Of a DNA stretch of 64,000 nucleotides, positions 16,548 to 16,638 are shown piece by piece; within the stretch, counting starts at the first letter, position 1, and the number at the start of each line of letters is the position of its first letter. Both the position numbers and the translations under genes were made by a program. Where the stretch lies: sequence record PQ390715.1, one strand, 5' to 3'. Under the pieces are notes generated by a model. It was not told where the DNA came from, did not search any database, and saw only the letters and a list, made by a program, of their open reading frames with translations.

Positions 16548-16638
16548 CGAAAGAGGTGGGATTTGAACCCACGAAGCGTTATTTCTAACACTTGCTCGCT
16601 TAGTAGGCGAGTGCAATCAACCGCTCTGCCACCCTTCC
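16548..16638 (-). tRNA. tRNA-Ser with rare ACT anticodon
   Basis: GGAAGGGTGGCAGAGCGG 5' half; CTCGC-CTACTAA-GCGAG; long variable arm; G73; 3' end reads CAA rather than CCA. Confidence 0.85.

What the first reader, a model, noticed from the sequence alone, without database searches (positions are those of the whole stretch)
16548..16638. tRNA-Ser with ACU anticodon; two odd tRNAs target the AGN box
Seen: clear Ser-type body with loop CT-ACT-AA. Established: bacteria decode AGY with GCU, and enterobacterial TadA edits only tRNA-Arg(ACG), so an A34 Ser tRNA is highly unusual. Seen: the other atypical tRNA (17517) has UCU, so both address AGN codons. Inference: tuning of AGU decoding (AGT is the first half of the enriched AGTACT), evasion of a nuclease against tRNA-Ser(GCU), or altered AGN decoding.
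Basis: partly seen in the sequence, partly recalled or inferred. Interest (0 to 1): 0.65.

Follow-up and report, generated by a model that had tools for sequence, protein, structure and literature searches.

The report
Phage serine tRNA with ACU anticodon
A giant E. coli phage carries a genuine, conserved serine tRNA whose anticodon starts with A. Cells almost never use this design, but it recurs in many viruses, and it most likely reads only AGU, the phage's favourite serine codon.

Summary
Window 16548-16638 (minus strand) encodes a type II tRNA-Ser with anticodon ACU (A34 = window 16604) in Escherichia phage SHEFM2K, an Asteriusvirus jumbo phage.

- **Not an error or private mutation.** The gene is 100% identical in 17 phages. 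Diverged ACU versions occur in EJP2, Munch and Hallingskeid. In 10 ACU tRNAs, 21 of 25 stem pairs covary.
- **It shares a slot with GCU.** In sister phages the same promoter-proximal slot holds a different tRNA-Ser(GCU). Five phages carry both.
- **Largely confined to viruses.** A pattern scan found 25 true Ser(ACU) tRNAs in viral contigs. Across 185,579 prokaryote species it found 3, all on AT-rich MAG contigs.
- **Best reading.** The tRNA is charged by host SerRS, keeps A34 unmodified, and reads AGU. AGU is the phage's top serine codon (22.6 per 1000, against 3.5 for AGC).
- **Published support.** An E. coli experiment with an ACU anticodon in the same CUACUAA loop found no inosine. It read AGU, and AGC and AGA were below detection.
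- **Other readings.** Recoding of AGN and TadA editing are not supported. Nuclease evasion remains untested.
- **Why A rather than G is unexplained.** Viral loci with ACU and with GCU prefer AGU about equally.
- **The neighbour.** The odd UCU tRNA was noted earlier in this scan on this window.

The parts
16548..16638 (-). tRNA-Ser(ACU). It is type II, with a 20-nt variable arm (8 bp plus a GAAA loop), discriminator G73, C11:G24, and an acceptor stem G1:C72, G2.U71, A3:U70. The 3' CCA is not encoded; CAA follows G73.
16602..16604 (-). Anticodon A34 C35 U36, with A34 at 16604. The loop CUACUAA spans 16600-16606 and the anticodon stem is CUCGC/GCGAG.
   Evidence: The loop is identical in the EJP2, Munch and Hallingskeid versions, which were found by similarity and not by pattern.
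16649..16677 (-). Sigma-70-type promoter TTGACT-17-TATAAT with an extended -10 TG. It ends 10 nt upstream of the tRNA 5' end, and its spacer holds CAGTACTG.
   Evidence: 11 of 12 matches. The same promoter precedes the GCU allele in PBECO4 and the ACU allele in Sharanji.
16465..16539 (-). tRNA-Met(CAU), 8 nt downstream of tRNA-Ser(ACU) and probably on the same transcript.
16300..16374 (-). tRNA-Asn(GUU), next downstream member of the tRNA cluster.

Best explanation
This is a functional phage tRNA-Ser that specialises in the codon AGU.

**Proposed mechanism**
- It is the first gene behind a strong sigma-70-type promoter, followed 8 nt later by tRNA-Met and then by tRNA-Asn.
- It is cut out of that precursor and given its CCA end by the host or by the phage's own CCA-adding-family enzyme.
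- Host SerRS charges it with serine, because SerRS reads the long variable arm and G73, not the anticodon.
- A34 stays an unmodified adenosine and pairs Watson-Crick with the U of AGU.
- The few AGC codons are left to the host tRNA-Ser(GCU).
- It adds decoding capacity for the phage's commonest serine codon, which the host reads only by G.U wobble with a single-gene tRNA.

**Shown here:** the gene, its fold, its conservation and covariation, the promoter match, and the codon usage.

**Taken from a published E. coli experiment with a different tRNA body:** no inosine and AGU-only reading.

**Inferred:** serine charging, expression, and codon supply as the selective reason.
For: 1. **Real and selected.**
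- The gene is 100% identical in 17 phages, although the surrounding 5.5 kb falls to 92.5% identity in 121Q.
- Diverged ACU versions with other acceptor, variable-arm, T-arm and even anticodon stems occur in EJP2, Munch and Hallingskeid.
- In 10 ACU tRNAs, 21 of 25 pairs show compensatory changes.

2. **Ser-type body.** It has a long variable arm, G73 and C11:G24. The phage has no class II synthetase core but does have a CCA-adding-family ORF.

3. **Codon match.**
- Window ORFs use AGT at 22.6 per 1000 (33% of Ser) and AGC at 3.5.
- An E. coli sample uses AGT at 9.3 and AGC at 15.5.
- For the other phage tRNAs (ACA, UCA, GGA, AGA, AAU), the cognate codon is enriched about 2- to 3-fold over the host sample.

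4. **Published experiment (PMC11066159).** An orthogonal tRNA with anticodon ACU was tested in E. coli. Its loop otherwise equals that of tRNA-Arg2, so it is CUACUAA as here.
- cDNA sequencing showed no inosine.
- It read AGU at 9.4%. AGC and AGA were below detection and AGG was 0.36%.

5. **TadA requirement.** TadA needs YUACGAA, and mutating single positions of this motif abolishes or nearly abolishes editing in two mRNAs (PMC12255301). This loop has U at position 36.

6. **Same slot as GCU.** The ACU gene sits in the same promoter-proximal slot that holds tRNA-Ser(GCU) in sister phages, as expected for an AGY-box reader.
Against: - No RNA data cover the tRNA, so expression, charging and the state of A34 are unobserved.
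- The published test used a Methanocaldococcus tRNA-Tyr body, not this tRNA.
- Codon supply explains why the phage has an AGY reader but not why it has A instead of G. Viral loci with Ser(ACU) and with Ser(GCU) prefer AGT about equally (median share 0.74 against 0.72, p = 0.18).
- Near-identical sister phages manage with GCU alone.
- G2.U71 replaces the G2:C71 pair of E. coli serV.
Confidence: 0.6

Rival explanations
1. Defence evasion or replacement. The tRNA exists to keep AGY decoding going when a host anticodon nuclease, or the phage's own host shut-off, destroys host tRNA-Ser. A34 is kept because it removes a nuclease recognition base.
For: - Phage tRNAs are proposed to resist anticodon nucleases through anticodon-loop changes (PMC10264068).
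[quoted passage not shown] The phage cluster carries Thr, Met and two Ser tRNAs.
- Codon preference does not separate ACU from GCU carriers, so something else may select A34.
Against: - These sources name no nuclease specific for tRNA-Ser(GCU). The ApeA example shown is tRNA-Ser(GGA).
- Many sister phages on the same host species keep G34.
- The rest of the loop matches E. coli serV (CU-N-CUAA), so only position 34 differs.
Confidence: 0.15
2. Near-neutral switch. In a genome where AGC is only 5% of serine codons and mutation pressure favours A/T, G34 to A34 costs almost nothing. ACU and GCU would then be interchangeable alleles, shuffled by recombination in a mosaic tRNA cluster.
For: - ACU and GCU genes occupy the same slot behind the same promoter in phages about 98% identical around it.
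- ACU and GCU viral loci have the same AGT share.
- The label changes 7-9 times on the tRNA tree.
- The downstream tRNA-Met differs among SHEFM2K, PBECO4 and Sharanji.
Against: - The ACU gene is not a point mutant of the neighbouring GCU gene. It is a different tRNA with other stems.
- One well-supported clade of 22 sequences holds 18 ACU tRNAs from very different viruses.
- The gene is invariant in 17 phages.
- Five phages keep both genes.
- Such tRNAs are almost absent from AT-rich bacteria in the 185,579-species scan.
Confidence: 0.12
3. Inosine tRNA. A34 is deaminated to I34 by host TadA or by a phage deaminase. One tRNA would then read AGU and AGC, and weakly AGA, which would put some serine at arginine codons.
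For: - The loop differs from the TadA substrate loop CUACGAA at one position only. The stem shares 4 of 5 pairs with E. coli argV.
- Over-expressed TadA edits sites one base off its four-base motif.
- The phage has a small 122-aa HAE/PCxxC deaminase of unknown substrate.
Against: - No inosine was seen in an ACU anticodon within the same loop in E. coli.
- Single changes in the motif abolish editing in two mRNAs.
- The anticodon stem-loop is just as close to serV, with 3 differences from each.
- The 122-aa deaminase is 100% identical in PBECO4, where the ACU query found no match, and is conserved (about 75% identity) in RaK2-type phages, where only a GCU-type Ser tRNA was detected.
- The protein that the Sharanji paper calls a tRNA adenosine deaminase is the T4-type dCMP deaminase homologue.
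- AGA is common in the phage at 9.4 per 1000, so I34 would be harmful.
Confidence: 0.08

Closest known systems
Phage-encoded codon-compensation tRNAs (T4, T5, Felix O1 tRNA clusters)
   Same: It lies in a tRNA cluster of a virulent phage. Each tRNA matches a codon that is much commoner in the AT-rich phage than in the host. It sits among small ORFs in a mosaic region that varies between relatives.
   Different: To read a U-ending codon it uses A at the wobble position instead of the universal G. The papers found here do not describe this for phage tRNAs.
E. coli tRNA-Ser(GCU), serV
   Same: Both are type II tRNAs with a long variable arm, G73, C11:G24 and a loop CU-N-CUAA. Both serve the AGY box.
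   Different: - A34 replaces G34.
- The anticodon stem has G30:C40 instead of C30:G40.
- G2.U71 replaces G2:C71.
- CCA is not encoded.
- There is no blastn similarity to any E. coli genome at E up to 1.
E. coli tRNA-Arg2(ACG), the TadA substrate
   Same: It is the only E. coli tRNA with a genomic A34. Its loop CUACGAA differs from this loop at one base, and its stem shares 4 of 5 pairs.
   Different: Position 36 is U, not G, and that position is part of the motif TadA requires. The body is type II Ser, not type I Arg.
Natural unmodified-A34 tRNAs (Mycoplasma tRNA-Thr(AGU)) and engineered A34 tRNAs
   Same: An adenosine at the wobble position that is expected to stay unmodified and to prefer U-ending codons (PMC11066159).
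   Different: The Mycoplasma Thr case serves a four-codon box. This tRNA sits in a split box (AGY Ser, AGR Arg), where misreading would change the amino acid.

Membership tests
tRNA (Rfam RF00005) | The covariance-model score exceeds the gathering threshold over the full-length model. | tested here: met
   49.9 bits against 29, model positions 1-71. ARAGORN also calls it.
tRNA (Rfam RF00005) | Cloverleaf stems are kept by compensatory changes among relatives. | tested here: met
   21 of 25 pairs have both-sided changes in 10 ACU tRNAs.
Bacterial tRNA-Ser (E. coli SerRS substrate) | A long variable arm (type II). | tested here: met
   The arm is 20 nt, 8 bp plus a GAAA loop.
Bacterial tRNA-Ser (E. 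coli SerRS substrate) | Discriminator G73 and C11:G24. | tested here: met
   Read from the sequence and the alignment with serV. The Munch and Hallingskeid versions have A73 instead.
Bacterial tRNA-Ser (E. coli SerRS substrate) | Acceptor pair G2:C71, as in E. coli Ser tRNAs. | tested here: not met
   The pair is G2.U71 here. EJP2, Munch and serV have G2:C71. That this pair matters for SerRS is recalled knowledge and was not checked in a paper.
Bacterial tRNA-Ser (E. coli SerRS substrate) | Aminoacylation with serine. | not testable with these tools
   This needs charging assays. The phage has no class II synthetase core of its own.
TadA (A34-to-I34) substrates | A seven-base loop YUACGAA on a 5-bp stem. 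| tested here: not met
   The loop is CUACUAA, so position 36 is U. An ACU anticodon in this loop was not deaminated in E. coli.
Codon-compensation phage tRNA | The cognate codon is clearly commoner in the phage than in the host. | tested here: met
   AGT is 22.6 per 1000 in the phage against 9.3 in the host sample. AGT:AGC is 6.5:1 against 0.6:1 (from ORF-based samples of 17.7k and 14.6k codons).
Nuclease-resistant phage tRNA (van den Berg model) | The host counterpart is a known nuclease target and the phage copy differs at the recognition or cleavage site. | tested here: inconclusive
   The phage copy differs from serV only at position 34 of the loop. No nuclease for tRNA-Ser(GCU) was found in the papers read.

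The most novel reading that the evidence does not exclude
Ser(ACU) tRNAs, together with the other non-Arg A34 tRNAs seen in viral arrays (Ser AGA, Thr AGU, Leu AAG, Phe AAA, Cys ACA, His AUG), form a virus-specific class of natural unmodified wobble-adenosine tRNAs. They would be kept because A34 gives strict one-codon reading of U-ending codons and also makes the anticodon loop invisible to host enzymes and nucleases that recognise G34. Phages would then hold the only sizeable natural collection of A34 decoders in split codon boxes.
Probability: 0.25. Interest if true: 0.7.

Novelty: new variant of a known kind. Interest (0 to 1): 0.5.

Why it matters
Genomic A34 outside tRNA-Arg(ACG) is so rare in cells that the decoding rules of unmodified wobble adenosine had to be studied with engineered tRNAs (PMC11066159).

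This scan turns up a natural, conserved A34 tRNA in a split codon box, carried by cultivable E. coli phages. It has a ready-made natural control, because sister phages carry GCU in the same slot.

That makes three questions directly testable in a standard host:
- whether A34 stays unmodified;
- how strictly it reads AGU;
- what it is worth to a phage.

The survey also suggests that such tRNAs are a viral habit and largely absent from bacteria. This bears on why cells avoid A34, and on the debate between codon compensation and defence evasion for phage tRNAs.

Database records already annotate the anticodon, but none of the papers searched discusses it.

Tried and rejected
- **No whole genome is held for the window.** I worked through the public record PQ390715.1 instead.
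- **RNA evidence for inosine.** Four RNA runs were laid. Their contigs miss 16547-16638, so nothing can be said about A34 in RNA.
- **blastn of the tRNA against all complete E. coli genomes found nothing.** It is not a recent host capture.
- **Sharanji's "tRNA-specific adenosine deaminase" looked like a partner enzyme.** It is the T4-type dCMP deaminase homologue (best PDB match 1vq2, E 8e-35). Its C-terminus is identical to the SHEFM2K ORF. Rejected.
- **The 122-aa deaminase-fold ORF.**
  - It hits only Pfam PF00383 at 29 bits and the PHROG dCMP deaminase family. It has no NCBIfam or PDB sequence match.
  - It is 100% identical in PBECO4, where the ACU query found no match.
Its substrate stays open.
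- **Mimicry of tRNA-Arg2 by the anticodon stem-loop.** It is equally close to serV, so this is not evidence for editing.
- **Does a stronger AGU preference predict ACU over GCU among viral contigs?** No. GC is slightly lower in ACU loci (0.356 against 0.391), but the samples are not independent.
- **Missing control.** The bacterial rarity of ACU therefore rests on 7 pattern hits plus general knowledge.
- **Literature searches** for Ser(ACU) in phages returned nothing relevant.

Full report
**Where the window lies.** Window 14000-19500 is 100% identical to Escherichia phage SHEFM2K (PQ390715.1, 348,006 bp) at 138000-143500. Its relatives belong to the genus Asteriusvirus: PBECO4, 121Q, Sharanji and about 40 others. 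Window position equals record position minus 124,000. No whole genome is held for the window, so the record was searched through its handle.

**The observation.**
- ARAGORN finds six tRNAs in the window, all on the minus strand. One is tRNA-Ser(act) at 16547-16638.
- Rfam's tRNA model scores it 49.9 bits against a threshold of 29. The depositors' tRNAscan-SE run gave 63.3 and the label tRNA-Ser(ACT).
- Read on the minus strand, the RNA has:
  - an acceptor stem GGAAGGG/CUCUUUC, with two G.U pairs;
  - discriminator G73;
  - D stem GCAG/UUGC;
  - anticodon stem CUCGC/GCGAG and loop CUACUAA;
  - a 20-nt variable arm (8 bp plus GAAA);
  - T arm GUGGG-UUCAAAU-CCCAC.
- The minimum-free-energy fold is this cloverleaf.
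- A34 is window 16604.
- CCA is not encoded; CAA follows G73. The same is true of the Thr and Gly tRNAs of the cluster.
- The whole phage record has only seven tRNA-model matches, all in this cluster: Thr UGU, Asn GUU, Met CAU, Ser ACU, the odd UCU RNA, Ser UGA and Gly UCC.

**Not an error or a private mutation.**
- The 106-nt stretch around the tRNA is 100% identical in 18 records from 17 phages. One of them is 121Q, whose surrounding 5.5 kb is only 92.5% identical.
- EJP2 has a second ACU tRNA. It shares the 17-nt anticodon stem-loop but has a different acceptor stem, variable arm and T stem.
- Salmonella phage Munch and Erwinia phage Hallingskeid are more distant relatives in the same jumbo-phage group. 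They carry ACU tRNAs with yet another anticodon stem (ACGGU/ACCGU) and the same loop.
- In an alignment of ten ACU tRNAs, the consensus fold is the type II cloverleaf. Of 25 pairs, 21 show both-sided compensatory changes.

**An alternative to GCU in the same slot.**
- PBECO4 and about 20 other Asteriusvirus phages carry a tRNA-Ser(GCU) with different stems: D stem GGAU and anticodon stem CUACC. In PBECO4 it lies directly upstream of tRNA-Met, in the slot that SHEFM2K gives to ACU.
- The same promoter precedes both alleles: TTGACT, a 17-nt spacer holding CAGTACTG, then TATAAT. It ends 10 nt before the tRNA.
- Taken together, searches give this distribution:
  - 13 phages with ACU only;
  - about 17 with GCU only;
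  - ph0011, Turkey3, JP4 and WPEC3 with both;
  - EJP2 with its own ACU type plus GCU.
- The ACU gene therefore behaves as a positional allele of an AGY-box serine tRNA. It is not a point mutant of the GCU gene.

**Wider distribution.**
- A pattern tied to this D arm and the loop (TGGCRGAG, 1-2 nt, GGYT, 12 nt, CTACTAA) hit 29 viral contigs of IMG/VR. ARAGORN of them tRNA-Ser(act).
- The same pattern with CTGCTAA hit 85 contigs. Of 79 checked, 70 are tRNA-Ser(gct).
- In one genome for each of 185,579 bacterial and archaeal species, the ACU pattern hit 7 contigs.
  - Only 3 are called tRNA-Ser(act).
  - All 3 lie on MAG contigs with 28-31% G+C.
  - One of these tRNAs is identical to one on a viral contig.
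- A tree was built from 24 unique ACU and 52 unique GCU sequences with the wobble base masked.
  - The ACU label needs 7-9 changes, and at least 2 are forced by well-supported branches.
  - One supported clade of 22 sequences holds 18 ACU tRNAs, including this one.
  - With 92 columns, most forks are unresolved.
- Among 882 unique tRNAs in these viral loci, other non-Arg A34 anticodons also occur: Ser AGA 7, Thr AGU 7, Leu AAG 5, Phe AAA 4, Cys ACA 2, His AUG 1 and Pro AGG 1.

**What it most likely does.**
- Ninety-five ORFs of the window (17.7k codons, 33% G+C) use AGT at 22.6 per 1000. That is 33% of Ser codons and the top Ser codon. They use AGC at 3.5 per 1000.
- Fifty-nine ORFs from a 50-kb E. 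coli K-12 sample use AGT at 9.3 and AGC at 15.5 per 1000.
- The other phage tRNAs also match codons enriched about 2- to 3-fold over the host sample (per 1000, phage against host):

| Codon | Phage | E. coli sample |
|---|---|---|
| ACA | 23.0 | 8.6 |
| UCA | 20.6 | 7.9 |
| GGA | 11.9 | 6.4 |
| AGA | 9.4 | 3.7 |
| AAU | 41.7 | 15.5 |

- Schmitt, Tittle and Fisk (PMC11066159) tested A34 anticodons in E. coli on a tRNA whose loop otherwise equals that of tRNA-Arg2. With ACU its loop is therefore CUACUAA, as here.
  - With ACU they saw only T at position 34 in cDNA, so no inosine.
  - Reassignment of AGU was 9.4%.
  - AGC and AGA were below detection, and AGG was 0.36%.
- TadA-dependent editing across gammaproteobacteria needs YUACGAA in a stem-loop. 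Single-base changes abolished or nearly abolished editing in two mRNAs (PMC12255301).
- The phage lacks a class II synthetase core, so host SerRS must charge the tRNA. The phage does encode a CCA-adding-family ORF.
- I therefore read this as an AGU-dedicated serine tRNA with unmodified A34.

**What remains unexplained.**
- Codon supply accounts for having an AGY reader, but not for A over G.
  - Viral loci with ACU and with GCU have similar AGT shares (0.74 against 0.72, p = 0.18).
  - ACU loci have slightly lower G+C, but the samples are not independent.
- Sister phages do without ACU.

**The inosine idea.**
- The stem-loop has 3 differences from E. coli argV (CUCGG-CUACGAA-CCGAG). It also has 3 differences from serV (CUCCC-CUGCUAA-GGGAG), so the resemblance to the TadA substrate is not diagnostic.
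- The Sharanji paper lists a "tRNA-specific adenosine deaminase". That protein, WNN14772.1, is the homologue of a 163-aa ORF whose best PDB match is T4 dCMP deaminase (E 8e-35). Its C-terminal 47 residues are identical to the SHEFM2K ORF.
- A second, 122-aa HAE/PCxxC deaminase-fold ORF is 100% identical in PBECO4 and conserved in RaK2-type phages. The ACU query found no match in either, and only a GCU-type Ser tRNA was detected there.

**The neighbour.**
- The RNA at 17517-17600 has a UCU anticodon, A73 and an encoded CCA, and it lacks a normal D stem.
- It is conserved at 80-99% identity in 267 phage records, including Felix O1. Changes in the acceptor, anticodon and T stems keep pairing.
- Sharanji and EJP2 have ordinary tRNA-Arg(UCU) genes next to their tRNA-Ser(UGA) instead.
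- Together with AGA enrichment in the phage, this fits ordinary AGA supply. It does not fit a joint change of AGN meaning.

**Verdict.**
- It is already annotated in databases. No paper found in these searches discusses it.
- It is a new variant of a known kind: a phage codon-supply tRNA that uses a wobble adenosine in a split codon box.
- In this survey it belongs to a largely virus-confined set of such tRNAs.

Noticed in passing
window 17517-17600 (-): A tRNA-like RNA with a UCU anticodon, A73, an encoded CCA and no normal D stem. It is conserved at 80-99% identity in 267 phage records, including Felix O1, Klebsiella, Streptomyces and Campylobacter phages. It is annotated variously as tRNA-Leu, tRNA-TERM or tRNA, or is left unannotated. 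SHEFM2K and Felix O1 differ by changes that keep the acceptor, anticodon and T stems paired.
   Followed up: partly
window, 25 sites such as 16656-16663, 16726-16733 and 17135-17142: The palindrome CAGTACTG occurs 25 times against 0.6 expected. At the two promoters examined it sits in the spacer of TTGACT-17-TATAAT. This explains the AGTACT enrichment without any link to codon use.
   Followed up: partly
L004:8448-8530, L005:3037-3119, L023:1581-1662: Contigs labelled as giant-virus MAGs (GVMAG) carry 82-83-nt tRNA-Ser(ACU) genes. Two of them have exactly the same 17-nt anticodon stem-loop as the Asteriusvirus tRNA, on otherwise different bodies. I did not check whether these contigs are truly eukaryotic viruses.
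   Followed up: no
L013:5007-5097 (Munch), L014:5007-5097 (Hallingskeid): Their Ser-type ACU tRNAs have discriminator A73 instead of G73. In E. coli, A73 is a leucine identity mark (recalled knowledge). Which amino acid they carry is worth testing.
   Followed up: no
viral loci L015-L124: Other A34 anticodons occur among 882 unique viral tRNAs, including split-box cases Phe(AAA), Cys(ACA) and His(AUG), as well as Ser(AGA) and Thr(AGU).
   Followed up: partly
PQ390715.1 335464-335829 (outside the window; L010:1492-1860): A 122-aa HAE/PCxxC deaminase-fold protein with no PDB or NCBIfam sequence match. It is conserved in RaK2-like jumbo phages, and tblastn also finds it in many Synechococcus, Pseudomonas and Aeromonas phages (197 records). 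Its substrate is unknown.
   Followed up: partly
window 16465-16539; L002:3900-3978; L132:2873-2962: The tRNA-Met downstream of the Ser slot differs in sequence and length (75, 79 and 90 nt as called) among SHEFM2K, PBECO4 and Sharanji, although the flanks are near-identical. The tRNA operon is strongly mosaic.
   Followed up: no
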